NCBI RefSeq assembly: GCF_000002075.1
Contig: NW_004798019.1
Coordinates: 279,166 to 341,948, forward strand
Direction of reading: 5' to 3'
DNA length: 62,783 bases
Source: Aplysia californica
Taxonomy: Eukaryota
The notes beneath the pieces were generated by a model. The model worked only from the letters and a program-made list of their open reading frames with translations. It did no database searches and was not told the DNA's origin. This document shows, in pieces, positions 27,944 through 61,085 of the stretch (its first letter is position 1; every line of letters begins with the position of its first letter). The position numbers were made by a program, and so were the translations under genes.

Positions 27944-29820
27944 TTTAGGAGGCGGGCTTCCGATCCAGCCTCTCAAGGCCGCTGGCCCTAGAGGTATACA
28001 ACATCCCAGCAGAAAGACCGAGATAGGCCTACTTTATAAAAATGTATCCCTACTCGGAATCGACAACAAAAACTCTTTCAGGTAGGTTCAGCAAGCCCAC
28101 TCTACCAGTGAAAGACAGAGGGAAAGATTATCATGAAACCAGAAGGGCAATTTAACCGATGGAGAGAACACTTTGATCAACTCTTAAACAGACCACCTTC
28201 AGAAAACCAACCAGAAATTCTTCCAGCCAGAAATAACCCCCCAGTAGTTACGGAACCACCTTCGAGAGAAGAAATTGCTGCAGCTAAAAAAACATACCTG
28301 AAATCCCACAATGCAGCTGGTCCCGACCATAACACCGAGAACCCTTAAGGCAGATAACGATACATCAGTGAGAATTCTCTATACTCTCTTCGAAAAGGTT
28401 TGGCAAGAAGAGGAAATACGATCAGACTGGAAGTCAGTGGAAGGAAGGCCACCCAACCAAGATACCAAAGAAGGGAGACCTCAGCAATTGTAACAACTAC
28501 TGAGGTATAACATTCCTGTCCGTACCTGAGAAAGTCTTTAACAGGATACTCCTGGAAAGAATCAAGCTGGCAACAGACGAGAAGCTCCGAGGAAACCAGG
28601 CAGGATTCCGAAAAAAACAACAACCGATCATGTGTGGACCAGATCGCTACTCTGCGCATCATTGTTGGGCAGTCACTTGAACGGAATTCACCACTCGTGG
28701 TCAACTTAATTGATTATGAAAAGGCGTTCAACAGCATAGAAAGGGAAACTCTGTGGAAACTCATGCGTCATTATGGAAAGCCTGACAAAATCGTCAAACT
28801 TGTGAAGGCCACCTTTGATGGAACAAACTGCCAAGTCTTCCACGAAGGACAACTCACAGAACCATTCCAGGTACAGACAGGAGTGCGACAAGGATGCTTG
28901 CTCTCACCTTTTCTCTTCATACCGGCAATTGACTGGGTCTTGAAAGAAGCCACCAAAGGCAATCGTAATGGAATACAGTGGATTCCTTGGCAGCAGATGG
29001 ACGACTTGGACTTCGCCGATGACCTTGCACTGCTCTCTCACACACATGCTCAGATGCAAGAAGAGACTACGGAACTCAACGGCCTATCAAGGATTGTTGG
29101 CCTACGTATACATCCAGGCAAGTCGAAAGTAGTGAGGCTAGGAAAAGTTTCAAGTCCTTCTGTGACAGTGGAAGACACTCCCCTGGAAGAAATGGACTCC
29201 TTTACCTACCTTGGAAGTGACATCGATTTTAAATGCTTGATTTAATCACTTATCAAAAGTCTGGAAAGCAAGCAACATCTTACTGCGCACCAAGATTCGA
29301 CTCGTTAACTCCAATGCCAAGTCTGTGCTCCTCTAGGGCTGCGAAACTTGGAAAACAAAGTACTGAATAAAGTCCAGACTTTCATCAACATATGTATGAG
29401 GAGTATCCTAAGAATTAAGTGGCAGGATAGAATTAGAAATTAAGAGCTGTGGGAAAGGACAGGACAAAATGATAAGTAGAAATAGGACTAAGAAAGTGGC
29501 GATGGGTGGGACACGCCACACCTTCAGAAAGCCTAGCGGAAACATCACAAGACAGTCGCTGCAGTGGAACTCACAGGGAGCAGTAGGCAGGGATAGTCCA
29601 TGTGAAACACGGAGGAGATGTGTGGAAAGGGACCTGAGAGAGATGAAGCTTAGTTGGAACGAGCTTGGAAGGATGGCCCAGGACAGAGATAAATGAAAGG
29701 AGCTTGAATGTGGCCTATACCCTGCCAGGGGTGAAAGGCATTGATGATGACTCAGGAATCGAACTCGGTTCTCCTGCGAGCGACAGCGAAGAGCCTAACC
29801 GTTACACCATAGACGCCGGT
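27944..29820 (-). mobile_element. tRNA-derived SINE split by the RTE insertion (head 29820-29750, body 28063-27944)
   Basis: Head has A box TGGTGTAACGG and B box GAGTTCGATTCC. The body matches the intact copies at 3702-3890 and 44635-44822. Confidence 0.75.
28064..29749 (+). mobile_element. 5'-truncated, frameshifted RTE-clade LINE (reverse transcriptase pseudo-ORF)
   Basis: DQIATLRII, IDYEKAFNS, GVRQGCLLSPFLF, LDFADDLALL and FTYLGS motifs; several stops and frameshifts; (GAT)n 3' tail. TSD actcggaatcga (28052-28063) / actcaggaatcga (29750-29762). Confidence 0.92.
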
Positions 29821-31552: not shown

Positions 31553-33398
31553 TTAAGACTTACTTGTACTTCATTTACAGTACAGAATATGACATATCAG
31601 TGGTGTTCTGATCGGGATCTTTGCCAACCAAAACACTTTGAACCTAAGGGTTAAATTCTCTCAAGGAGAAGAAATTTCTTAGGGTTTAGAGTGCCTCCTT
31701 TAAAAGTACAGCCTCAAAACAGCCCAAGATAGTCCTGATGGACAGGTCAAGACAGATCACCATCTGTGGACCTAAATTGTGTCATGGTCATGTTTCTTTG
31801 CTAAAAGTAAAAAGAAACATAAGTCATTCAGTGCGAGGAGCAAAAAGCAAGTTTTCTTTTAGTTTGTTTTACAACACTTGCAACACAAAAAAATCAGCCA
31901 CAAGAAAAAAAAAATAGGAGTAGGGATCAGGACGATACTTGTTTATAGGAAAGAAGGCACAAACCACACCAGAGTACCCATCAATCACCCATGAGAAAAA
32001 ATACAGGTCGAAAGAAACAACACACTAAAAGCAAAGGAAGAGTAGGACTTAGGCTACCGACCAGCAGCGTGCACTAACCATCTGCACTGTGTCAAGGGCA
32101 AAAAACATAAAAATTAAAAATATTAACCTAAATTCCAATGAAGCAACACCAGAGAATGCATTCACAACATATTATATTGTGTTTTTGTCATGTGGAGAAT
32201 GGACGTGTACAAAGTAAACGACAGTAATATATTGACAATGGCAACATTAGAATTGAGTGTGACACCACAGTAGTCAACATGAACAGTAAATGTTGTTCTC
32301 CTCACTATAGTGAAGACTCTTCACTAACTAAACAATATAAACATTGTGTCTGTGGAGAATGGATTACTACAAATTCTACATCACAACATATCAATTTTAA
32401 CAATGACAAACACAAAGTCACCCCCGGGGCGGTGCTCCATACTGAAGTGTCTTTAGGCCATTTCCAAAGGGGGGACATAAGCCTGTTCTTATGCACAATA
32501 GAATTGTAAATGGGCTGATTCATCGATGTCATGCTCATAACTGTGCCCGAACTGCAACAGGGAACTGTTGCTTTTTCTTTCCTAATCCTTACTATTGTCA
32601 TTTTTCTCAACTTTTTTGTATGTTTGTCACACTCTTGTGATCCGGTATTTCCGGGGAGCCTTGATAGTGATAGTCGAAGCAGACTTTGTGCTGTTGAAGC
32701 TAGAGAAGTGAGAAGAATAAGTCTGATTCCTTGTGAGGACTTCTCTTTTGATATCCACCCCTTGGCGCTTATATGACCTTATGCTGTTGCAAGCGCCGTA
32801 AAACCTCTACTAAAACTATAACCCCCCCCACCCCCCAAAAGTAAGACACGACTGCAGTCAACACGAGCAAGTACATGATGTTGTATACTCCTCGTTATAG
32901 TGGAGACCCTTCACTAACGAAACAATATATCTGTCTGTGGAGAATGGATTCAATACAACTTCTACATTACAACTACAACAATATTAATAGTGACAAACAC
33001 AAAGTATGATGACATCCCTGTTATCAATACAAACAAGTACAATGTATACATATTTCTATAATATGTTGTATGCCTCATTTCATTATAGTGCAGTGGAGAC
33101 CCTTCGCGAACTTAACACTGTGTCTGTGAAGTATGGATAAATACACAGATGTGAAATGTGCTGACAAAATGAGTTACGGTATTTCTCGCAATCCACAAAT
33201 TGAGATTGGCCAAAAATTGATACTAAGGTCAAATTTGTATTTTTTATTGATTCCACATTCTTTAAGTATAACATGCCATTTACAATTTCATACTTATAAA
33301 CAGTAAAAACTATACCTATAAGCGTGATGTATCTTATTTCCATAGGGCTCGAATCCGAGACTCAACTCATTTAGTCAGCATGTTTCACATATTGACAT

Positions 33399-33839
33399 AT
33401 GTGAGGCAGCGTGATGGAATCAGGCTCTCGTCAAATAATCAAATTGAAGAAACCTGCATTTTTCCGCAGGTTTGTGAATTTTTATCTAGTTTTTGTTTTT
33501 TGGCTCAACACCTTTCATGCCCATTAAAGAACTTATTTCTGTGTGGAATTTTCTCAAAAACGTTGATTAAAGGCACAAAAAAAGTAAATGTTCAATTACC
33601 ACGGACTCTTAAGCTAAGGAAATAACCAATCTTTGGCGGCCATTTTCTGACTAATTTTTCCTCTGAAAACAGGTGACCCCCACCTCCTTCATTCGCAAAT
33701 ATCTCCACTTGTATTCAAGATAAATGGACAATTTTTCATCCAAATAAAGACAAGTGAACAAACTTTAAGATGATACCAATAACTCTACATACATGCCCAA
33801 AAATAGACGAGAGCCTGATTACACCACGCTGCATCACAT
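33399..33839. mobile_element. MITE with ~35-bp TIRs (second copy 59631-60075, TIR remnant about 59497-59531)
   Basis: atgtgaggcagcgtgatggaatcaggctctcgtc / gacgagagcctgattacaccacgctgcatcacat. Internal sequence is colinear with the 59.6-60.1 kb copy. Confidence 0.85.
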
Positions 33840-36439
33840 TATATATATATGACAATGATTGTCAAGGAGTGTGACAATGCTGTAGTCAACAAAAACAAAT
33901 TCCTTATTTGAGACTATCCACTAACAAAAAGTACTTGGTTTCGTTTTGGTAAGAGTTTTATAACACTTGCAACACAAACGCATCTGACAGTCATATATAA
34001 ATGCTGAAGATAGAAGGTGTTACTAGTGAGTAATATACAAAGAAAAGAAAGAGGAGGGATACGGAAGACAGATGTTTGAAACGAAAGAGGGAGTTGAAAG
34101 AGATGTTTTAAGCCTACACAATTTGCAAAACATTGGTAGAATTGTAATTAATTCATCAAAACATTTTCATAGATTCCAATTCTGAACCCTGAGAACTCTT
34201 ATCTCAGAATTCATAACCACACTGTCAATACATTGTATAATAAACAAGTGTTAAAAGAACTAAAACGTGGATAAAAGTTTTTCAAACCAAGAGCTCAAAC
34301 TAATTTGACTTTAGGGCATACATCAGCTCTCCAATTTGTTGCAGATATAAGACAAATCAATGGCAGTAGGGTATTTGTACAGTAAACTCACTGTAGCATG
34401 ATAGACTTCTTTTCAGAAACAACAAACAATGAAAAATACTCCAGTACAATCCGCATCAATCTAAAACACACTTTGATACCTCTCTTGAAAAGGTAAAATC
34501 CTAACAACATGTACAATGTTGCCAAAGGCAGATTTCAATGTAGTCATAGATTCTTTTGGTAAAAATGGTAGAAATATAATTTTTTATAAGCCAAAATGAT
34601 ATGGGCTTTAAAAAAAAAAATATTTCTCTTTATCTCCCTTCTCCTTCTACTTCTTCACTCTCTCTTGCTTTTAAAAGAATTTTACAACTAAAACTAAATG
34701 GACTTGTTCACAAAATGCTCAACAGATGAGAACAATTGTAATCCTCCACTCACCTTCATCCTCACCTAACTGCTAATCAAGCGATGCTGTTTTCTACGAC
34801 AAACTTTCAACTTGAATGTACACCTATAGATTCTACATGTATCTACAACCCTGAGAAATTCTGACGAAACTTCTTTTCAGATAACTTGAATAATGTATTT
34901 GACATAATAGCTGATTGCACATCGTAAGGTCAGATCTATCACGGCTATAAAAATCTATAGTAATATTTTAATCAAGTTAAAATCATTACTCCCGAATATA
35001 GATCTACCTGTCTACAAACAGAAAGAATTCTGTTACCTGTTGCTTACTTAGTTCAAAGAAAGTCCAATGAATGAATGAATGGCTAATCTTTACAATTTAA
35101 AGAAATGCATTATTGTAAAAGCAAATAAATTATTTTGTTTAACCACTTTGAGAGAGCTAAAATTTAATGCCAAATAATTAACTGAAATGCTGGATGGTAC
35201 CACCTCCTACATATATGTGTGTGTTTTGCCAGGAAGACATTGGCCAACATATAATTTGAAAGTCTTGTCTTGATGAAAGATCTCTGGCTTCCTGTTTCCA
35301 GCAATCCAGTACATGTATTATTTTAGTATGCAAGCAACTCCCAGAGCCAAACTTCAGCGGTCATATTCTCTTAGAAAGGCAATAAGTATGAAAATCTGTG
35401 GCTGTTTTCGAAGTTCATAAAATAATTTTGCTAGGTTAAGTTATGGTTGCCATGCCATTTATAAGCAAACAGATAAGGGAACATTAAAAACCAGCTGTAT
35501 ATAGCCCGATTGTATGTTTGTCACATAGATCAAGTAGCAAGGAAATAATATTGTTCAGTTCATGTAAGTAAATGCCACCACAACTGTTTGTTAACATTTT
35601 GACCAAAACATCAGGGTAGTCAACAAAAAATAAATGTATAATATGTAATTAATTATAAATTCTTTCTCCTCAGAGTTTTACTGCTAAGAAAAGTTGCAAA
35701 TACTTTCCATGACAGATACTCAGAATCAGATCTACGAAAATGTAATAATTGAAAAAAACCCAACTATTCACAAAATGCTGAAATATTATTTATAGAGATC
35801 ATGTAGATATCCATTTTACATATAAATTTATAATTCTAGATATCTGCTGGCCATATGTGAGATTGAGTTTCTGATCCACCTGTCCGACGGGAAGCCATCT
35901 GCTCCAACATCTAAAAAACCTACACTGTTTCACAAAACATCAAATATTAATTACAAAAATGAACAAACAGGGGTGTCTGTCTAACAGCAACCGACATAAG
36001 AAGCAAGCTTTCCTTGTTCTTAGGCGGAGGTTGTTGCTATGCTGATGACTGAATTATTTTCAATTTTTTCAATTTTTTTTTTTGGGGGGGGGGGGGGGAG
36101 TTATCTGCCATAACGTCAGTGAACTGACTGCCACAGAAGTACACACCGCACATGGCGCACAACACCAACAGGTTGGCTACTTGATTATCTTTCTCCCATG
36201 AGAAAGGCATAGAAATTTGAAATAGAGAGAGAGAGGACTCTTGGCTCTGAATACATGAGCATGTACATGTATATCACCAAGAAAAAGACAGTTTTCAGAC
36301 ACAGATCACACAGCAGAATCATGTTCCTAGACGGTGACATTGGGCAGTCGGGGCAATACAACAGAGGAACCCCTTTGATTTTGAACAGCCAGCCCCACTG
36401 TGCCACCAACTTCATGCCCGTCCCAAGAGGGGAGGTATA

Positions 36440-36514
<75 letters not shown>

Positions 36515-37350
36515 CAAGGTTTGACTGTATTAAAATCAGCCCCAAATTTTGAACATTTGTTAATTGCAGTTTTTTAATCTGTGGTATTATTTGCAGAGTG
36601 CTCAAGAAATATTTTTACGAAATTCACACTCTTAAAGTTGAAGAAAAAAAAAGGCAAAAGAAATAACATAATTTTGGTACAATTGTTAAAAGAATAAAAC
36701 AGTTTTTTCCTCTCTCCTGTAAAATATTATGCTTTCTCGGCCTAGTATATTTCAACATCCTGTCGATGATATGCATCCTTGACTTTACGGTACTTTACCA
36801 TATTCATCCGTGCCAAACTTTTTAGTTCAAGAGTCTTTGTTGCCTGACAAAACAAAGGAAGAACCAGGAATACACAAATTGCACAATTGGAGCTCTACAA
36901 GCACACTCCGAGTCTCTCTCTCTCTCTCTCCTTTTCACTCTCAAAAATATGCCCAAGCACGTGTATATCACTGATATGAAGAATGTCATAATGGTAACTG
37001 AAAACAGTTCCCTGGACTGTCAATAGAGTATTCTGGCATTAAACACAAAACTTGATACATGTAGAAAAATGACTTGTTATGTAAAAGGTACCTAGGCCTA
37101 TTACATATATATATACACAATGTTCGACATTTCACAAATTTGAGCTGATAAAGTTGATCTATTTATAGCACATTAGGTTTACTTGAACAGTGAGTAACAA
37201 AAGTCTATCCCTGAGCAAAAAATGCTAAAAATAACCTGAATCCAGCAGTGTTTACCACAATTTCTACATAGTTATAAAAAACAATATCTCATTCTCAGTC
37301 TTATCAACTGTTTCTGAGGAGGCATACTTCCCTTTGGCTTTCAAAAATCT

Positions 37351-37498
37351 TTAGGAAGTAGGATAGTAGTAATTCAAATTTAAAGTGCGCATAGCTTGAT
37401 ACACAGTCATGTTTGGCTCATACGCTGCAGGATCAGTAGCAGGGTTCTGAGGGCGTTCATAGTATTCCAAGCTGCGGTCGTAGCGACAGTCATTCTGG

Positions 37499-37531
<33 letters not shown>

Positions 37532-40083
37532 TGTTGCTGTGGCATATCAAACACAGAAAGAACTCTCTGGTCTTTGAGCTCTGTCTTATGTGCCAAATGG
37601 GCCTCACTTTGCTGACTGTCGAGAGCATCAAACACAAGAGGCCCAACAGGCATGGCAACAGACATTGGCAGAGTTGTAAGTACCTTATGATCCTCCATTA
37701 AAGTCAGTGGTCCATTTGGCTGGAATTGCAATGGTGGTTGGGACGACTGCGGAGGGGGAGGAGGTGGTGCAGGAGGAGGAGGAGGAGGAGGAAGCGACGG
37801 TGGAGGAACAGAGTGCGGTGGAAGAAGAGATGGACCAGGAGCCTTCATGCTATTGCCAGCAACTTTCCTAGTGGCAGCAGCCGCAGTAACCGGCAGCTTG
37901 CTCAGATCTCCAGAAAGGGCAGCCTGAGGGTCTTGTATGCCATGAGTTCGGCGTAAGTGTTTGTTCTTTCCATACGTGGTGGTGAAGCCTGCATCACAGA
38001 TTGGGCATTTGTGCGGCTTCTGTCCTGTATGCTTGAGATTATGTTTGATGAGATTGCAGCGCTTCGTACAGCTATAACCACACGCTGTGCACTTGAAGGG
38101 GCGTGGCCGGTTAGCATCGTGGATTTTCATGTGTGCAGCGAGTGCAGGTTTTGTTCTGAACCTTGACGAACACGTAGGACAGATGAAAGGCTTCTCCCCA
38201 CTGTGCTTCCTCACATGGTTCTCGTAGGGTTTTTTACTGATAAAGCATTCGCCACAAGTATCGCACTTGTAAGGAGCCTCCCCAGCATGCACTTTGAGAT
38301 GAAGGTTAAACGTCTTCTCCTTCTTGAAGCTCAGATCACACTTGTCACACTGATATGGTTTCACTGAACTGTGTTTGCTTTTGTGGTCACGAAGATTGCA
38401 CCGGAAACGATAAGCTTTCCCGCACACTTCACATACAAATGGTTTGTCTCTAGCCTTTGGCCCATGTCGTACCTCTTTGTGGTAATCATATTTCTTCTTA
38501 CTGACCAGAATAGCCCCACAAAGTTCACAAGGGTACCTCTGCCTGGTGTGCATTGACTCGTGCTTATGAAGGGTACCTGAAGACTTGAACACTTTTCCAC
38601 AGAAGGTACACACTCCTCCTAAATCGTCCGGCATGGTTTCTTCGGGATGCTTTTGAAGGAAATGTTGCTTCAGTACACATGGCCAACGGAATGGTTTGGC
38701 ACAGATTGCACATTCATAATTGTATTTTTTTTCCTTGTTCTTCTTGATAGGGAGCTTCATTCCAAGCTTCTGAGCCTTCAGTAGAAGTGCTGCTTTGGAC
38801 TGGAGCTGTTTCTTCCTCACTTCTTCAGCACTCACGACTTCTCTTTCTGTTGTAGATTGGCTCTCCTCAACCCCAGTATCATTGAGAGTATCACCAGAAT
38901 CATCTTCTTCATCAGAAATCACCTTATGGGTACCTTCTTCTTCTTTGTCGTCTTTCCGAGGATGACTCAACAAGTCTGCACTTCCGTTTTCCTTAACAGA
39001 ATTGACTGGTTCTGATAATTTTAGTTTATGTCCATTAGACGCTTGGGAGGAATTTTCTGAAATTGTGACAGACAACACATTCAGGCTGTGAACAGACTTA
39101 AAATGGGAGGCGAGATCAGTTTCATCCATACACAGAGTTGTGCAGATGTGGCATTGGAAAAAGGAATTCTTCTTTGCCTTTTGGGATAATGTTCTCTCTA
39201 AAACAACAGAGGGATTCATAGCTGCTTGTTTACTGTCTGAAGCTTTTCCTCCTCTTCGAGGATACTTTCGTTTCACAGGGCTCACCTGATCTGCAGAACA
39301 CTTTGAAACACCTAGCTTTGCCTTAACTTGGGGTCTCTTCCTCAATCGCTCTTTCCTCTTTGGCAGCTTTTGAGTCTCATCCTCTTCTGTTTTAACTGCA
39401 TCTGGATTTGTAACTGCCTCAGTTTTTGTTTCACCATTTTGTAATTCTGAACTGAGAAATGATGAATCTTCCTCAATTGAGTCTTCTAATTCTCCTTCTT
39501 CACCTTGTGCATCAAGCCGCTCTGACACTTTTTTTTTCACACATCCAAAGTTTACTTCACAGCTGCCATCTTGACAAACACCCTTTTTCTGACAAACATC
39601 AAACACATCTTTGAGATCAGGGAACTTTGTCTTCAGCAAAATGCTCAGAGATTCATTAGCAATTCCTCCGATGATTCGATCTCTCAGCTGTAGAGTCTTC
39701 AGCTCACAGAATTCAAAAACTCGAATCAAGTCTGCTAGGAAACTGCAAATACATTCTCCTTTCTTCTGAGATATGGAGAAGAACTTATATCTCTCGTACA
39801 GCAGAATGAACTTGGGTAAACAAGCACTGCTGATTTTTTCCAGGAGGATATTGGCAGCCACATCTTGGTCATCACTATAAGTGGCAAGGGACTTGACCAT
39901 CTCTACGACCTGCTTGCCTCCGAGGTAAGACAAAAGTGACTTTTTTCTTTGACGACCCTTCCCAGGCCCTTTAGGAAGCAGCTTGTCGTAACTGTTAAAC
40001 CTTTGGTTCAGGCTGTGCCAATTTCCAAGAGTTAGTTTTGCAGACTCTTCGAAATCAGACGGTAAAGGTACCATGAACTCCAT
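37351..40083 (-). CDS. Gag-like (Ty3/Gypsy capsid-derived) domain plus C2H2 zinc-finger protein, 910 aa, single coding exon
   Basis: Uninterrupted ORF with Kozak-like caccATGG and an upstream acceptor at 40164-40165. One isolated finger plus 9 clustered C2H2 fingers (about 38720-37942) with HSGEKPF/HTGQKPH linkers. aa 20-165 show the retroelement Gag pattern. Poly-P and poly-Q tail. Confidence 0.93.
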
Positions 40084-41121
40084 GGTGTCTCAAAGACTAA
40101 ACTGAAGGTTAGATGATTTACCGCTAAAAAATAAAGCTCAGAACTTGTCCATTGGTTTGATGCCTGAAAAAGAAAGAAAAACAAAAATGTGTGACATATG
40201 CAGGTCCAGTCCAATCATAAACAAATCTAAAAATTTACAAAAAAAGAACGAACAAATGTTGAGGTGGACATTAACCATGACCGAGAAACGTGCTTAGAGC
40301 ACAAACAGTTCTAAACAGTCAAGTCCCCAGAAGTCGATGATAAGCAGGCTGTAAGTGTATAACAGAAAGTCCAAGAAGCATACCAGAATTTATAAGAATT
40401 TTATCCTGCAATGGGCAATCTCCAAAAGCCAAAACGCATTCTGTTCACTTTGGAAACTTAAGCTCCTAAAGTCTCAGGCAAGATTAGACTAACCTTCCCC
40501 TCACCCGTATTCCAAAAATACTAAATTTGATATTAAAATTCACAGTAAAATTAGATTCAATCTAAGCTTATGCAAAATATAGGTTAACCACGTGAGACAG
40601 CTATGCCACACAGCACAGAGAACATAATATTGAGCACCAGTGCATACATCATTCACAATGTCAATTTGATTTTGATTCAGACGGCTAGCCACATTTTCAT
40701 TTTCTTTTGTATGGCAAAAAAAAAAAGTGACCATTTTGGCACAGTGCAACTGAATTCAACTTAATTCGACGGTGATCTTTAATATTAAACATGCTTGTTT
40801 GTAAATGTTGCGGGTCGAATCCGTCAAAACTGGTGGTTAAGATTTTTTTTTTTTACTTCAGTGCCCCCCCCCCAAACGGTCCAAAGTCAAAGCGCGCAAA
40901 TAACTACATGGTGTGATGCAGCTCGATCAAAAACCATCAAATCATCAAATATTTTTTAAAACTAATTAACGACGGAAATGAAGTTGATATTCTCGTGTTC
41001 AGTGCATCAATAGATCTTGATCTAGATAAGTATAAGATAGATATCTAGCAGAAAATGGACAACTGGTACCTAAGCTTGTGACGGGAGGGAAAGTAAAAGA
41101 ATGCAACAAAAAATCAATAGT

Positions 41122-41500
41122 AATTTTTATTGAAGTGACTATTTCTCCGAACGCTAGGGAAAATAAACTTGACCTCTATTTCCCCAAATGGTTTCTGTTC
41201 TCGAAATTTTTTGGTAATTTGAGAGATTTTGGCGTCATCTTTCATTCTGCGAGGACTCGGAGGAAGCATTTTTTTGCATCATTTTCAATTTCTAGATCTG
41301 GAGTTCTTTAAATGTCTGAATATTCAGACTTCAAATTGAAGTTCAATTGTGGTAGAGGCAACGTTCCTGGACTTTACTTCATTTGAAAATGCCTTCAAAA
41401 AAACGTACTGCAGGAGAAAACAAGACCGCTCGACCTTAGCAATAACCTATTTTGCATTTAGTCACCCCTAAAGCAAAAACAAAAATCCTTCATGTAAACA
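41122..41500 (+). repeat. Dispersed ~380-bp repeat (inverted copy at 58520-58862)
   Basis: gaagtgactatttctcc.aacgct..ggaaaataaa ... ttttgcatttagtcaccc..aaaatccttcatgtaaa matches the reverse complement of 58520-58862. Confidence 0.85.
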
Positions 41501-42109
41501 AAAAAAATCCCTCCACCCCCCCTCCCCCCACACACCTATACTCCTATACACACACGTACTCACTCTCACACACATACGCGGGCCACTCCATTCGCAAAAA
41601 AAACAACAAATCTCGAGAACGTAAACCACTCGGAGATTCAGAGAAATACAGTTCAAGTTTATTTTCCAGAGCGATAGATCTAGATCTAGATCCGGCCAAA
41701 AAAAGGCCAATTTTTATTAGGGTTAGGGCAAGGGGTAGGCAGTCTACTCTAAATCTAGAGAAATAGCAGAGTGAGAGGGTCACAATCATCATAATCATTC
41801 ATTAGAGTTTGGGCTAGGGGAAGGGGGTAAGGGTTTAGGGGTAGGATTGCAGGATAGTAATAGTAGTAGTAGGGTTGTATAGATCTAGATCTAGATTCTA
41901 GGGATTGTTGGGGCCAGTACCAGATTATTCTCGTTCATCAACTTTCATTCATCACACAGTCACACAATCACCGAGCAGCAAGATTCTATTTCTTTCAGAA
42001 ATTTTCTTTCTCTTCGAAAGACTCAGGCTCAGGACTACTAAGATAGATCTAAACATCTCTATTTTTTGCGTGCTATACCTTACTAAAGTGACCAAAGGCT
42101 AAAACTTAC

Positions 42110-42230
42110 AGAAAAAAATCCACAAATGGAAAGAAATGTTCAAGTACTTTTATTTGTTTACAGTCGAGTCGGTCAGCCAGGAAACCAGGAAGGACGCCAT
42201 CTTTGCCAGAGTTTTCTGAGAGTACAGAAG
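42110..42230 (-). other. Probable non-coding first exon of the Gag-ZNF gene
   Basis: Donor GTAAGT at 42109-42104, YY1-like AAGATGGCG at about 42203-42195, and TAGATC tracts just downstream as at the other gene starts. The 5' boundary is a guess. Confidence 0.55.
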
Positions 42231-42713
42231 TTGGTACCAACCAACCAGGCTAATTCCATGATAATGTTTCGTTAAAACCGCGAAAAGTTCTGTGACCTGT
42301 GTAACATGCGATTTTTCATCTTACAACGTAAGGGTTGCAATAACGAATTATACTTGTATCATGATTACAAACAAAAGAGAAATAACAAATTATTGGAAAT
42401 AACATAATAGGCTAGGCCTACCAACTTTTCATTTTTGTTGTTGTCGGGCCTCCAGTTGTCTTTGATTACTTGCCTACTATACATACTGTTTGCACCCAAA
42501 CCAGTCAGTCCGGGGCATACGTGGGAGGAGGAGGAGGGGGGGGGGGGGGGGGGGGGGGGGGTACATCGATCTGTTACTTCAGTTCAGTAAAAGTAAAAGA
42601 AACTTTCCAAAAGTTGACTCGATTACAAGTGACACAGAAATAACGCGTGTGATTCTACAGTATTGTATTGATGAGTATAGACAGAGCAATAGTGGACCGT
42701 GTGTGTGTGTTTG

Positions 42714-42894
42714 TTTTAGTAAGAGTTTTAAGACACTTGCAACACAATAAGGTCATATAAGTATAAGTGCCGAAGATTAGAGGTGTTACAAGAGAGTAAC
42801 AAACACAAAAAAGGAGGGGAGATAAAGACGATAGCTAGACGTTTGATAGGAAAGAAGAAGCATACCACACCAGAGCACCCGCCAACCACCCACG
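42714..42894 (-). mobile_element. Best copy of a high-copy ~170-bp SINE-like or LINE-3'-end repeat
   Basis: About 15 copies in the window. The sense strand ends in the stem-loop cggcRctt..atgacc..aagtgccg followed by an (ACTAAA)n tail, resembling 3' ends of I/Nimb-type LINEs. Confidence 0.8.
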
Positions 42895-42911
42895 TGTGTG
42901 TGTGTGTGTGA

Positions 42912-42968
<57 letters not shown>

Positions 42969-43110
42969 TATGTGTGTGTGTTAGAGCGAAGGCGTACGTG
43001 TTTGCTTATTTGTGTGCGTGTGTGTGCGCCTGCGTGTTTGTGTTAGCGTATATATATGGTGCATGTGTATAAAATTTGTGTGCGTGTGTGTGCGTGAGCG
43101 CGTGTGTGTT
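42894..43110. repeat. (TG)n microsatellite region
   Basis: Read directly from the sequence. Confidence 0.95.
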
Positions 43111-46100
43111 AGCAGCATGCGTAGCTTAGTGTAGGCATGTATTCTGTGCATGTGAGAGCCCGCGCGTGCGTGTTTAAATCATGTAGGTGGGTTTCCGACC
43201 CTGCCTGTAGTGTCAGGCCCAACGGTCCCAGGTTGAGAACGATGCAACACCTAAACAAAATGATCGAAATAGCCTATTGTACTCGATTAGAATTCCTCGG
43301 CTTAAAAAGGTTTCGCCCACTCGGGTACCGACCTCGGCTCTCCTGCTTACAACAACGATTTCGAAGAGCTTAACACTTAAACGCTGCACTGTGCTTTTCT
43401 GACTTGTGTGCGGCGAGCGGGAAGCACACTTTGAGTAACCTTGTGTTCAGGCTTGCACATTTCTCCAGTCGATGACACGTTTGTTGAACTTAAACTTAAA
43501 CAGAAGCAGACATAAGCCCTGGGCATCTCTTTCGTGGATGTAAAGAACAAGAACAGCATTGACTCGAGTGAGTCTCTCTCGCTGCATCGCATAATTTCTT
43601 ATATGACATTTTTTAGTGTTCTCCTCTTTAGTTTCAGGGTGCTAAAGTAGAGTTCCGCTTCTGTGGATGTTACAGATCCATGTCGTGTGAACAATCTTCT
43701 TCATCATACAATGGAAATCTGATATAACCGTCAGGGATGGTAGGACCAGAGAAAAAGCCCTGTTTCTGTTACATTCGATCCCTGTTAAATCAAAAATGCA
43801 GGGGAAGTAAGCATTTGTGAACTAATCCAGATGTATTTATTCATGGGTAGTTTCCCTTGACACAAGTACCCAAGCACAGGGGTTTTTGCCTCGTGGCAGG
43901 CCTGCGCTTGACATATTATGCGTGCGTGTAGCTAGGCTTAGGGCTAGATTGAAGTCTGTCGCACACCGCAGCCCTCTCTCGCTTCACCCGCTGCATGTGC
44001 TTGCAGTTGCAGTGGCGTGGGCTTGTTCCATCATTACTCTCTCTTACTTTTTACACGTTGTTAACGAGCCTTGGTCCCTGCTATAACCCATTGGGTTCCA
44101 ATGAGGCCCTTTTATTGCCGATCACTTTCAATAGAGACAAAGAGTAGCAAAAAACGGGAATTAAAAAAATACCTGTCATTACTGGATCCCTGTTATTACC
44201 AGGCCTGTTATATAATATATGGTTTCCACTGTACATACCATGTACATTTTGTGGATTTCTTTTAAAAGTATCCTGCAGACCCATAGACATACAGTCATGC
44301 AGTTGAACCTGTTAGTTCAAATAGCCACCAGTGCAAAAGGCCACTACCCATTCCTCCTTGCATTTTAAAAAACATAATTTATAATGACACTGTCTTAGAC
44401 AACCACCTGTCCAATACATGTACAGCCAATTTTTAACTCAACAATGGATGGCTGTTTTAATAATACAGTTTCCATTGTATTCTCAGCAGACACAAAAAAT
44501 TAGTGAAGAGATTAGACAGTTCAGTCTGTGCTCTACATGAACGAAAAAAAATTAATTGTGTACAGAACGTACCAGCCGTACCTTACTCAGAAGTGGGAAC
44601 TACTTCTTTTCTTAGGTATGTGTACAATTTAGATCTTTTAGGAGGCTGACTTTGGGACAACTCGGACAGAGGATACAACATCCGAGAAGAAAGAAAGAGA
44701 CTTAGAAACAAGTAGCCTACTTAGTACTGTATTCTATAAAAATTCTCCCCACATGAAAATCGAACAAGGGTTTTCTGTGTGCCATGGCGAAACACCTAAC
44801 CTCTACACCACAGATGCTGGTTCCTCACGCTGACTGTCTATCTGTGACATTGACAAACCATTCAACCGGCCGTTGTCTTTCACGAACTTGACACTGTTGC
44901 TGTTACCATAGATGGTGACTAGCAGATGTTAGTGGTTTCATCTTCTGACGCTGCGATGAAATCCGATTTTGCTATTGATTCTTTGAGATCTTCAAAGTAC
45001 ATACATGCTTCCAAAGAACTAGAAACAAGTTTACGTTTTAGTAAAGTTTAAGGCACTTGCAACAAGAGAGGGAGAAATAAGGACGACAGATGTTTGAAAG
45101 GAAAGAAGGAGCAAACCACAACAGAAAAGCCAGGATTTCCTTTTGTTCCTGACTAATGTTTACCTAGCCACATATATGCAGTTTCAAACTATGCCCGTCA
45201 ATCTGATTTATCTTGTGTACACTGAAAGTGATCAAACCAAGAAAACTCTCTTGTTACTATAGGAGATAAAACAGATTTATTGTGTCCTCCGAGATGCAGC
45301 TCGAGGAAACCACAATATTTGATGCCTTCAATAATCTCTGTTTGAAATATGCCTGTTTTCCTTAACTTGCTTATTGTGAAGTTCCAGTGATAGCTGATGA
45401 CCTTCAAGTATTTGAGATATTTTACGTGTCCACTGACACAATTTCACTTAGGAGGCGGGCTTCGGCCTAGCAAAAGCTGTCAATTCAAAGCTGAAGAGCA
45501 TATGGAAAGATAACTACCCCTGTGCTTTCCAGATGAGGCTGTGGAGGCAGGAATCTTGCATACTGCCTACCAAGTCAAGAAGAATATTCTGAATTAATTT
45601 GTGATCCACTCTCATCCACATCACAATAGACAGCAGTAGTAGCCCTAAATCAAGAAAACGGTATCTCTAAAGAGAAAATGAATAATGGCATACAATGAGG
45701 AACACATGAACAAATTAGGAGAGAGGAATGTTTTATTCCTTTCTGAAAAGAGAAACTTCATAAGCTAAGTGAATAAGAAATCCCCCCCCCCCCCCAACCT
45801 ATTCACTTCTCTCTTCATTTTACATATATCATAAAAAATATTCATAATCATTGCACATCTAAACTGACATCCTTTTCAAGCATTCACTTAGCAACTGAAA
45901 GTACTGAAAGCAATAGATAAAGCTATTTACAACCAACGCTTCAGCAGTTTACATGGTAATGGTAAAAAAGTGTTCATATTTATATGAAACGGGCAATACA
46001 GTCTGTGAGAAGTTTTTGAAATGAACAAAATGAATGAAATTTGCTGCCTTAACTTGAAATTCAAGCATCTGAACAGAGCTTAATTATCAGTTGCTGAAGC

Positions 46101-46425: not shown

Positions 46426-57461
<11,036 letters not shown>

Positions 57462-59228: not shown

Positions 59229-61085
59229 AAATAATATCATATTGGCCATATATATATAATATTTTTATGTCTTTATTTTATTTGTTCTGCATTTGGACAA
59301 CTGTCTCACTATATTTATATTTTGTTCTGTGTTAAGGTGTTCTTCAGAAATATGGACAGACTTAAAATTACATCACTATTTTTTTTATTATAGTAGAGGG
59401 TTTTACGGCGCTCACAACTGCATTAGGTCATATGAGCGCCAAATTACATCACTGATTGTCGAAAGAATACATATATCATATGTCTGATAAGTTTGTATGA
59501 CGAGTGCCTGATTTCACCAAATGCCACACATTGTGACATTATCACAATGGCACTCCAAGGTGTCCACCTGTCAAAGACAGCCACTTTATCGTTGACAATA
59601 GGACAACTTCTAAACATATTATAGTTGAAAGTGAGGCATCGTGGTGAAATCAGGCTCTCATCAAATTAATGAAATCAAAGAAATCACCTTTTATTTGGCT
59701 GATGGTCAATTTTTACATAATTTTCTTTTGTTAGCTCAGCTCCTTTCATGTCCATTTAACAACACCTTTTTTATGTGGATTTTACTAAAAAACATTGATT
59801 AAAGGCACAGAAAAGGTAGGGTAAATTTTCAGTTTCCAGGGACACTGAGGCTATGGAAGTTACCAAACTTTGGCGGCCATTTTCTCACTAATTTCTCCTC
59901 TGATACCAGGAGACCCTGACCTCCTTCAATCGCAAATATACCGACTTCTTTTCTACATGGATGGATGTTTTTTCACTAAAAGGAAGGCAAATGAACATGC
60001 ATTAAGATGATACCAATAGCCCCATCATATGTCCAAAAATTGACGAGCGCCTGATTCCACCACGTTGTGACACATATATTATTATAATAAAAATTAAAAT
60101 CCTGATGACACCAACTTTTTCAGACCAGGGAATTTCTGTGTGTAAAGCAAATTTCATGTTAGGGAAGGTGCAATACCAAGTATTAAAGTTAAAGAGACAG
60201 AAAAAATGGGGAAACTCTTCTTTTGTGATTTCAGAAATTTTGTATTAAATGGCAAAAATACTACTGTTATGCATGGACCCACATGTACATGTTTACNNNN
60301 NNNNNNNNNNNNNNNNNNNNNNNNNNNNNNNNNNNNNNNNNNNNNNNNNNNNNNNNNNNNNNNNNNNNNNNNNNNNNNNNNNNNNNNNNNNNNNNNNNNN
60401 NNNNNNNNNNNNNNNNNNNNNNNNNNNNNNNNNNNNNNNNNNNNNNNNNNNNNNNNNNNNNNNNNNNNNNNNNNNNNNNNNNNNNNNNNNNNNNNNNNNN
60501 NNNNNNNNNNNNNNNNNNNNNNNNNNNNNNNNNNNNNNNNNNNNNNNNNNNNNNNNNNNNNNNNNNNNNNNNNNNNNNNNNNNNNNNNNNNNNNNNNNNN
60601 NNNNNNNNNNNNNNNNNNNNNNNNNNNNNNNNNNNNNNNNNNNNNNNNNNNNNNNNNNNNNNNNNNNNNNNNNNNNNNNNNNNNNNNNNNNNNNNNNNNN
60701 NNNNNNNNNNNNNNNNNNNNNNNNNNNNNNNNNNGCGGGGATATGCGCTATACAAATGCTATCTATTATTATTATTATTATTAGCTGTTGCTGCTGCTTC
60801 AGGAACATAAGTAGGACAACAAAAACAACTACCCTATTATCTATTTTGAACTCATGGTTTTGATCACTCGATTGTGAATGTGTACAATTTATTTGTATTT
60901 TTCTTCCAAAATGTATGGCAACAGAATGACAAAGCTTGGAAAGAAGCACACAGCAATTGGAATGATCAGACAGGTTTCAGAAAAGGAAGAAAGATTGACC
61001 TTCATTAGGAAATTCATTAGACAGCCATTGTACTCACATAATTAGCAGATCGGTTTGTAGACAGAATTATATGACATATTTTCAG

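What the first reader, a model, noticed from the sequence alone, without database searches (positions are those of the whole stretch)
37351..40083. Domesticated LTR-retrotransposon Gag (capsid) domain fused to a 10-finger C2H2 zinc-finger protein
Seen: aa ~20-165 (nt about 40026-39589) read NWHSLNQRFNSY...KKSLLSYLG...LLEKISSACLPK..LYERYKFFSISQKKGECICSFLADL.RVFEFCEL...LRDRIIGGIANESL..LL....L..V..VC. Established knowledge: this follows the Gag pattern of metazoan Ty3/Gypsy elements (NW..W...F..Y; LL...G; F.PK.N...ERYKF..R.Q..GE....F...L..LA..CEF; IRDRIV.GI.D..L...LL). Seen: there is no CCHC knuckle, protease, RT or integrase, and I saw no LTRs. The same intact, intronless frame continues into an acidic/basic linker, 10 C2H2 fingers and a Pro/Gln tail, and the gene has a spliced 5' leader. 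Inference: an independent invertebrate exaptation of Gag as the N-terminal effector or oligomerisation domain of a zinc-finger transcription factor, convergent with the vertebrate SCAN domain (itself Gag-capsid derived). It could be one member of an undescribed Gag-ZNF family.
Basis: partly seen in the sequence, partly recalled or inferred. Interest (0 to 1): 0.9.

Follow-up and report, generated by a model that had tools for sequence, protein, structure and literature searches.

The report
Sea-hare zinc-finger gene with retrotransposon capsid
This Aplysia gene encodes a zinc-finger protein whose front end is a capsid domain taken from a Ty3/gypsy-type retrotransposon, and it belongs to a previously unannotated family of such fusions found across sea slugs and snails, an invertebrate parallel to the vertebrate SCAN zinc-finger proteins.

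Summary
Residues ~5-167 are a retroelement Gag capsid (CA) domain, followed by a linker, 10 C2H2 fingers and a Pro/Gln tail. It has no CCHC knuckle, protease, RT or integrase, and there are no LTRs.

Pfam misses the CA domain, but an exhaustive HMMER search gives 738 relatives. These include Ty3/gypsy-type Gag-Pol proteins carrying the same domain at their N-terminus (order CA, CCHC, protease, RT, RNase H, integrase). A profile-profile comparison gives 99.9% probability (E 2.5e-34). The AlphaFold model has eight helices in two lobes, and its best fold matches are all retroviral or PNMA2 capsids, at weak E-values.

The window is Aplysia californica. At least 12 clusters of CA + C2H2 proteins occur in euthyneuran gastropods (Aplysia x3, Biomphalaria, Physella, Candidula, Elysia, Plakobranchus; Lymnaea contributes a CA-only fragment). 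Their CA domains form one clade (bootstrap 53/60). All CDSs checked are intronless. A syntenic Biomphalaria orthologue pair has dN/dS 0.06.

This is a domesticated Gag-ZNF family, independent of SCAN. What the CA domain does (oligomerisation versus anti-element defence) is inferred, not shown. Expression and the spliced 5' leader were not tested.

The parts
37351..40083 (-). Complete intronless CDS, 910 aa plus stop (CA-C2H2 fusion gene of Aplysia californica)
39583..40071 (-). Gag capsid (CA)-derived domain, aa 5-167
   Evidence: HMM envelope; phmmer hits to Gag-Pol N-termini; hhalign 99.9%; AF2 pLDDT 84; Foldseek top hits are all CA
39775..40029 (-). CA N-lobe, four predicted helices (aa 19-35, 43-69, 77-88, 91-103); holds the family-invariant core at aa 88-102
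39583..39750 (-). CA C-lobe, four predicted helices (aa 112-126, 130-140, 144-150, 157-167)
   Evidence: modelled alone it gave no informative fold match
39154..39582 (-). Linker aa 168-310: Cys-rich stub, an acidic stretch, then a Lys/Arg-rich stretch that looks like a nuclear localisation signal (inference)
   Evidence: translation; not alignable with paralogue P0003
39088..39153 (-). Isolated C2H2 finger 1 (aa 311-332)
   Evidence: collinear with a finger in P0003
38713..39087 (-). Acidic/Ser-rich spacer aa 333-457
37942..38712 (-). Tandem C2H2 fingers 2-10 (aa 458-714)
   Evidence: 58% identical to P0003 over this array
37354..37941 (-). Pro-rich and poly-Gln C-terminal tail (aa 715-910) with a short C-terminal motif shared with P0003
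40084..40165 (-). Candidate 5' leader segment after a polypyrimidine/AG acceptor-like site (AG at 40164-40165); contains a 4-codon uORF (40138-40152)
   Evidence: sequence read; no transcript evidence

Best explanation
Shown: the gene is a domesticated retrotransposon gag. An ancestor of euthyneuran gastropods kept the N-terminal, two-lobed capsid (CA) part of a Ty3/gypsy-type Gag-Pol ORF, including its original start. Everything from the nucleocapsid knuckle onward is replaced by a linker and a C2H2 zinc-finger array in one intronless ORF. The fusion then duplicated and diversified; Aplysia has at least three paralogues. The family has stayed intact, and where a close orthologue pair is available the whole gene is under purifying selection. 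Inferred mechanism: the protein is a nuclear, sequence-specific DNA-binding factor. The ten fingers read DNA and the basic linker imports the protein. The CA-derived domain serves as a protein-protein interaction module, giving self- or paralogue-association and/or partner recruitment, as the CA-derived SCAN domain does for vertebrate zinc-finger proteins.
For: Identity of the domain:
- phmmer E 1e-18 to 1e-10 to other CA+C2H2 proteins, and E 7.6e-16 to Gag-Pol proteins.
- Those Gag-Pols carry RVT_1, RT_RNaseH_2, Integrase_H2C2 and rve, and in one the matched region overlaps Pfam Retrotrans_gag.
- Their order is CA 4-166, CCHC ~225, protease motif ~284, RT motif ~560.
- The family profile against the element-Gag profile gives 99.9%, E 2.5e-34, over 169 columns.
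- 11 of 69 relatives hit Pfam PNMA or Retrotrans_gag.
- AF2 gives eight helices in two lobes, and every listed Foldseek PDB hit and the best-ranked BFVD hits are capsid or Gag.

Domestication:
- No LTRs, pol or NC.
- Single copy: the cluster has 1 member on 1 contig.
- It sits beside a YEATS host gene.
- The 21 family CA domains form one clade among 145, bootstrap 53/60.
- Members occur in Aplysiida, Sacoglossa, Hygrophila and Stylommatophora.
- Paralogue P0003 is collinear over CA, fingers and tail, while the linkers are unalignable.
- The B. glabrata / B. pfeifferi orthologues are syntenic. They differ at 8 synonymous and 2 non-synonymous sites (omega 0.06, p 8e-5), and the CDS is 99.5% identical against 90-96% in the flanks.

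DNA binding: ten C2H2 fingers with canonical spacing.
Against: - No expression, localisation, DNA-binding or oligomerisation data exist for any member.
- No close orthologue of the window gene itself was available, so constraint on it is inferred from the family.
- dN/dS for the CA part alone has no power: 3 differences in Biomphalaria, and 0.16-0.82 in the Elysia trio.
- Fold matches are consistent but individually weak (E 0.04-0.2, TM <=0.43), and the C-lobe alone matched neither CA-CTD nor SCAN.
- In some pairs CA diverges faster than the fingers, which fits the defence rival as well.
- One close relative (P0002) has the CA domain but no fingers.
Confidence: 0.6

Rival explanations
1. Anti-retroelement defence factor. 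The CA-derived domain binds the Gag of related, still-active Ty3/gypsy elements, as a capsid decoy or dominant-negative in the manner of Fv1 or enJS56A1. The finger array may also target element DNA for silencing, as KRAB-ZNFs do. The family would then diversify in an arms race.
For: - The CA domain keeps the residues that are near-invariant in element Gags (G56, R98, F101, Q106, C126, D135) and both lobes.
- Finger number varies from 6 to 16 among members.
- CA diverges faster than the fingers in some pairs, and both non-synonymous differences in Biomphalaria lie in CA.
- The family is lineage-restricted and expanded.
Against: - Among the relatives whose source organism was looked up, the element Gags come from arachnids, insects and a coral at 26-31% identity, not from gastropod elements, so no cognate target is in view.
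- Whole-gene omega in Biomphalaria is 0.06, which is not a sign of positive selection.
- Deep paralogues keep 58% identity in the fingers, unlike fast-turnover defence ZNFs.
Confidence: 0.2
2. A Gag-like protein that still self-assembles, with the C2H2 array standing in for the lost CCHC nucleocapsid as the nucleic-acid-binding part. This would be an Arc/PEG10-like carrier rather than a transcription factor.
For: - The layout of CA followed by zinc-binding nucleic-acid binders mirrors CA-NC.
- Both CA lobes are kept, unlike SCAN.
- The best TM-score among the top-ranked full-length matches is to the PNMA2 capsid protein.
Against: - About 740 residues, largely low-complexity, follow CA, which would be bulky for a shell subunit.
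- Canonical tandem fingers with TGEKP-like linkers are typical of DNA binders.
- There is a nuclear-import-like basic stretch.
- No direct evidence supports this reading.
Confidence: 0.07
3. No function: a decaying gag fragment that happens to lie in frame with a zinc-finger exon, or an assembly or annotation artefact.
For: - Pfam sees no domain in aa 1-175.
- No transcript evidence was obtained.
- The assembly has gaps elsewhere in the window.
Against: - It is a single 2733-nt ORF in raw genomic sequence.
- The same architecture appears in at least 12 clusters from at least 8 named gastropod species plus unnamed samples, all with intact frames.
- The CA domains are monophyletic.
- A family orthologue pair is under purifying selection.
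Confidence: 0.03

Closest known systems
Vertebrate SCAN-domain zinc-finger proteins (SCAN from a Gmr1-like Ty3/gypsy capsid; Emerson & Thomas 2011, as summarised in PMC8321522)
   Same: An N-terminal domain derived from a Ty3/gypsy Gag capsid is fused to a C-terminal C2H2 array. The family expanded by duplication within one animal lineage.
   Different: - SCAN is the capsid C-lobe only and is tetrapod-restricted. Here both lobes (~165 aa) are kept and the lineage is euthyneuran gastropods.
- No Pfam SCAN match even at E<=10, and no SCAN structure among the fold hits.
- No KRAB partner, and the whole CDS is intronless.
- Dimerisation is not shown here.
Stand-alone domesticated Gag genes: Arc/dArc, PNMA, RTL/SIRH, beetle Crtg1 (PMC8321522; PMC10516033)
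   Same: A co-opted Ty3/gypsy-type CA with both lobes, and loss of pol and LTRs. PNMA2 capsid is among the best structural matches. Six relatives hit Pfam PNMA.
   Different: Those genes encode Gag alone, or Gag plus a protease remnant, and several still form capsids. This one replaces NC and pol with a long DNA-binding C2H2 array. It was not found by the Pfam-HMM-based survey of 2,011 eukaryotes, and the domain is invisible to those models.
Ty3/gypsy-type Gag-Pol polyproteins labelled 'K02A2.6-like' (e.g. in the pseudoscorpion Cordylochernes scorpioides)
   Same: The CA domain is homologous over its full length and sits at the extreme N-terminus in both.
   Different: The elements continue into CCHC, protease, RT, RNase H and integrase and are multicopy. 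The window gene has none of these, has no LTRs, and is single copy. Identity is only 26-31%.
KRAB, ZAD and BTB zinc-finger families
   Same: The general plan is an N-terminal protein-interaction or effector domain plus a C2H2 array, with lineage-specific expansion.
   Different: The N-terminal domain here has a different fold and origin. There is no KRAB, ZAD, BTB or THAP match in Pfam.

Membership tests
Retroelement (Ty3/gypsy-type) Gag capsid domain | Significant sequence homology to the Gag region of Gag-Pol polyproteins | tested here: met
   phmmer E down to 7.6e-16 to Gag-Pol proteins with RT, RNase H and integrase. hhalign family profile against element-Gag profile: 99.9%, E 2.5e-34.
Retroelement (Ty3/gypsy-type) Gag capsid domain | Two-lobed all-helical CA fold | tested here: met
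   AF2 gives 8 helices in 4+4, pLDDT 84. Every listed PDB hit and the best-ranked BFVD hits are CA or Gag, prob 0.9-0.99, but E is 0.04-0.2 and TM <=0.43. The C-lobe alone was uninformative.
Retroelement (Ty3/gypsy-type) Gag capsid domain | Match to a curated Gag model (Pfam Retrotrans_gag, PNMA, Arc_C and similar) above threshold | tested here: not met
   The window domain has no hit at E<=10. Family members reach only E 0.06-0.08 to Retrotrans_gag. More distant relatives do pass.
Autonomous LTR retrotransposon | Flanking LTRs | tested here: not met
   No direct repeat of 60 bp or more within 33000-45000.
Autonomous LTR retrotransposon | Nucleocapsid knuckle, protease, RT, RNase H, integrase | tested here: not met
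   Pfam finds only C2H2 families. No CCHC motif. No gypsy pol similarity anywhere in the window.
Autonomous LTR retrotransposon | Multiple near-identical copies | tested here: not met
   The cluster has 1 member on 1 contig. The nearest relative is 36-42% identical in CA. A direct search of the whole Aplysia genome was not possible.
SCAN-domain zinc-finger proteins | SCAN domain (Pfam PF02023; capsid C-lobe only) | tested here: not met
   No SCAN hit at E<=10. The domain has both lobes. No SCAN structure among the fold hits.
SCAN-domain zinc-finger proteins | Capsid-derived N-terminal domain fused to C2H2 fingers | tested here: met
SCAN-domain zinc-finger proteins | Domain mediates homo- or hetero-dimerisation | not testable with these tools
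   No multimer prediction or experiment was available.
Co-opted (domesticated) gag gene | Orthologues or paralogues retained with intact frames across distant species | tested here: met
   21 intact family sequences from four euthyneuran orders, monophyletic with bootstrap 53/60.
Co-opted (domesticated) gag gene | Syntenic orthologues and purifying selection | tested here: inconclusive
   Met for a family member: the Biomphalaria pair is syntenic, omega 0.06, p 8e-5. No close orthologue of the window gene was available. CA-only estimates lack power.
Co-opted (domesticated) gag gene | Expression as a host mRNA | not tested
   No transcript data in the tools. Short Logan contigs show no poly(A) tails.
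C2H2 zinc-finger DNA-binding proteins | Tandem C2H2 fingers passing curated thresholds | tested here: met
   zf-H2C2_2 90 bits, zf-C2H2 75 bits; ten motif matches.

The most novel reading that the evidence does not exclude
Euthyneuran gastropods evolved their own capsid-based regulatory system. A full two-lobed Gag capsid is wired to programmable C2H2 arrays. The capsid domain either recognises the capsids or Gag of active retroelements directly (a combined capsid sensor and DNA-targeting silencer), or still builds higher-order capsid-like assemblies with the fingers acting in place of the nucleocapsid. Either would go beyond what SCAN does in vertebrates.
Probability: 0.12. Interest if true: 0.9.

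Novelty: new variant of a known kind. Interest (0 to 1): 0.72.

Why it matters
Few domesticated gag genes are known in invertebrates, and the only well-known capsid-to-transcription-factor fusion is the tetrapod SCAN family. This would be a second, independent capture of a Ty3/gypsy capsid by C2H2 proteins. It keeps the whole capsid and has lasted across the split between sea hares and pulmonate snails. It therefore offers a natural replicate for asking why capsid folds make good partner domains for zinc-finger proteins. It occurs in two laboratory animals, Aplysia (neurobiology) and Biomphalaria (the schistosome vector). It also shows that Pfam-based surveys miss such genes: wherever a source name was retrieved, it was just 'zinc finger protein' or 'uncharacterized'.

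Tried and rejected
- Direct Pfam scan and PDB sequence search of aa 1-175: nothing.
- The family-only profile against PDB also gave nothing.
- The mixed profile against PDB hit retroviral proteins only through the CCHC part that the window protein lacks, plus a marginal dArc1 match at E 0.78. I did not use this as evidence.
- The three word-index protein searches were nearly blind. The N-terminal region found only itself. The finger region was flooded by generic ZNFs, with only paralogue P0003 at 58%. The family profile found one 113-aa fragment. So absence outside Euthyneura is not established.
- The C-lobe alone, modelled and fold-searched to test SCAN likeness, gave only chance-level hits.
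- Synteny with YEATS was looked for in Plakobranchus, Physella and Elysia loci and not seen. These are probably not one-to-one orthologues.
- dN/dS on three ~97%-identical Elysia sequences had too few differences.
- Poly(A) tails on the short Logan contigs, as a proxy for expression: none.
- BTB, ZAD, THAP, KRAB and SCAN identities for the N-terminus are rejected.
- An active-element reading is rejected.
- The RT fragment at 28634-29245 is a different kind of RT and is unrelated to this gene.
- No exon joining was needed because the CDS is intronless.
Full report
**Observation**

window:37351-40083 on the minus strand is a single 910-aa ORF. In-frame stops lie just upstream of its ATG. A polypyrimidine tract ending in AG sits at 40164-40165, 80 nt upstream.

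Pfam finds only C2H2 families in the protein (zf-H2C2_2 at 90 bits, zf-C2H2 at 75 bits) and nothing in aa 1-175. A motif scan gives ten fingers, one at aa 311 and nine between 458 and 714, and no CCHC knuckle. No direct repeat of 60 bp or more lies within 33-45 kb. The window holds no second copy of the N-terminal domain and nothing resembling a gypsy-type pol. The description in the finding is accurate.

**What the N-terminal domain is**

A PDB sequence search found nothing, and a word-index search found only the protein itself. The exhaustive HMMER scan of 1.84 billion representatives with aa 1-200 gave 738 hits at E<=1e-3 and 22 at E<=1e-10. The hits fall into two groups.

The first group is long polyproteins with the domain at residues ~4-166, followed by RVT_1, RT_RNaseH_2, Integrase_H2C2 and rve.
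- Motif positions give the order CA, CCHC (~225), protease (~284), RT (~560).
- That is a Ty3/gypsy-type Gag-Pol.
- In one of them the matched stretch overlaps a Pfam Retrotrans_gag hit above threshold.
- Sources name them 'K02A2.6-like' from the pseudoscorpion Cordylochernes. Shorter relatives come from beetles, a hoverfly and a coral.
- Of 69 short relatives, 6 hit Pfam PNMA, 5 Retrotrans_gag and 5 zf-CCHC.

A profile of gastropod fusion proteins only (A3) against a profile of 64 element-type Gags (A4) gives hhalign probability 99.9%, E 2.5e-34, over 169 columns.

AlphaFold2 with a 69-sequence alignment gives pLDDT 84 and eight helices arranged 4+4.
- Foldseek against the PDB returns retroviral-type capsid proteins for every listed hit, namely lentiviral and deltaretroviral CA and the PNMA2 capsid (TM 0.42). 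Probabilities are 0.9-0.99 but E-values are weak, 0.04-0.2.
- The viral model library also returns Gag proteins first.
- The fold evidence is consistent but individually weak. The assignment rests mainly on sequence homology.
- The C-lobe modelled alone (aa 105-175, pLDDT 80) found neither CA-CTD nor SCAN. A specific structural likeness to SCAN is therefore not shown.

**The family**

The second group of hits is proteins of 600-1200 aa with the same domain at the N-terminus and 6-16 C2H2 fingers behind it. The window is Aplysia californica scaffold KB942145.1, with a YEATS-domain gene upstream.

Members named by their sources are:
- two further Aplysia paralogues, on other scaffolds or contigs (XP_005111353, 'uncharacterized'; XP_005095953, 'zinc finger protein 708')
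- Physella acuta
- Biomphalaria pfeifferi and B. glabrata (two loci)
- Candidula unifasciata
- Elysia crispata and Plakobranchus ocellatus
- two finger-less entries that group with the family: a 167-aa partial CA-only fragment from Lymnaea stagnalis and a 509-aa Elysia marginata protein

Several unnamed assemblies also contribute members. All named species are euthyneuran heterobranchs. No retrieved source name mentions Gag.

In a neighbour-joining tree of 145 CA domains, the 21 gastropod sequences form one exclusive clade, recovered in 53 of 60 bootstrap replicates. This argues for a single capture. The caveat is that no gastropod element Gags were identified in the sample.

Every family CDS whose genomic span I could check against its protein length is intronless.

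Aplysia paralogue P0003 is collinear with the window protein. CA is 35% identical, the finger array 58%, and a short C-terminal motif is shared, while the linkers do not align. The fusion therefore predates an old whole-gene duplication, and CA has been conserved where the neighbouring linker has not.

**Constraint**

The B. pfeifferi and B. glabrata orthologues are syntenic, with the same ceramide-kinase-like gene downstream.
- They differ at 8 synonymous and 2 non-synonymous sites: omega 0.06, Fisher p 8e-5.
- Coding identity is 99.5%, against 90-96% in the flanks.
- Both non-synonymous differences fall in CA, and CA alone has no statistical power.
- Three ~97%-identical Elysia sequences give a whole-gene omega of 0.40-0.54, with too few differences per region to interpret.
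- No close orthologue of the window gene itself was found, so its constraint is inferred from family behaviour.

**Mechanism**

What is shown is the architecture and its history: a full Gag capsid, starting at the element's own N-terminus, with nucleocapsid and pol replaced by a C2H2 array. The gene is single copy, lacks LTRs, and sits among host genes.

What is inferred is the function. I take it to be a nuclear DNA-binding factor in which the capsid-derived domain provides protein-protein contacts, by analogy with SCAN. The Lys/Arg-rich stretch in the linker looks like an import signal.

The rivals are:
- A defence role, in which CA engages the Gag of active elements and/or the fingers target element DNA. 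It is favoured by the variable finger number and by CA diverging faster than the fingers in some pairs. It is disfavoured by low omega and by the lack of a close gastropod element among the relatives seen.
- A still-assembling Gag, in which the fingers replace the nucleocapsid.
- Non-function, which the family data largely exclude.

**Comparison with known systems**

The closest analogue is the tetrapod SCAN-ZNF family (summarised in PMC8321522). This is not a member of it:
- there is no SCAN model match
- both lobes are retained rather than the C-lobe alone
- the host lineage is different and there is no KRAB partner

It belongs to the broader class of co-opted gag genes (Arc, PNMA, RTL, Crtg1) but differs in being fused to a long DNA-binding array. 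The Pfam-HMM survey of 2,011 eukaryotes lists only one new invertebrate case, in beetles, and no mollusc gene. The domain here is invisible to those models, which explains the miss. Five full-text searches found no description of a Gag-C2H2 family in invertebrates. That library is incomplete, so prior description cannot be excluded.

**Limits and rule compliance**

- Expression, splicing of the leader, localisation, binding and oligomerisation are untested.
- The GSTK1 neighbour was not checked.
- Absence of the family outside Euthyneura is not established. Only the best 150 of 738 hits could be inspected, and the word-index searches were insensitive.
- No exon joining was needed.
Consensus lines printed by hhalign and HMMER were not used.
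- A particle-assembly test is outside what this report may propose.

**Verdict**

This is a new variant of a known kind: an independent, invertebrate, full-capsid counterpart of SCAN-type zinc-finger proteins, with a family behind it.

Noticed in passing
L010:464-2923 (Logan SRR32535475 contig; protein P0002): The closest CA relative of the window protein (36-42% identity, sharing the invariant core at aa 88-102) is an 819-aa ORF with no C2H2 motif in any frame of its 3949-bp contig. The capsid domain may therefore also occur with a different, non-finger C-terminal part.
   Followed up: partly
window:28634-29245 (+): A 203-aa ORF with a Pfam RVT_1 reverse-transcriptase match (E 1.6e-18) lies next to an assembly gap at about 27.75-27.9 kb. 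It shows no similarity to the gypsy-type pol of the CA relatives, so it is an unrelated retroelement fragment.
   Followed up: partly
window:40138-40152 (-): A four-codon upstream ORF (ATG to TGA) lies in the putative 5' leader between the acceptor-like AG and the main ATG.
   Followed up: no
window:37354-37450 and 37540-37580 (-), aa ~848-858 and ~886-901: The C-terminal tail has a poly-Gln run and a short motif that is also present near the C-terminus of paralogue P0003 although the surrounding tail is not conserved. It may be a short linear interaction motif.
   Followed up: no
window:36330-36520: A long (TA)n-type microsatellite (it translates as Tyr-Ile repeats) lies about 0.8-1 kb downstream of the gene's stop codon.
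   Followed up: no
window:~46426-50083 (-) (= L001:1-3658): The 3' part of a YEATS-domain gene (Pfam YEATS and pYEATS) lies in the same orientation, about 6.3 kb upstream of the CA-ZNF gene. GSTK1 was not checked.
   Followed up: partly
window:~60290-60750: A second run of N (assembly gap or masked stretch). It was left as it is.
   Followed up: no
L008 and L009 (Biomphalaria pfeifferi and B. glabrata loci): Synonymous divergence in the CA-ZNF orthologue (dS about 0.02) is several-fold lower than the divergence of the flanking non-coding DNA (4-10%). This suggests constraint beyond the protein level or a locally low mutation rate.
   Followed up: no
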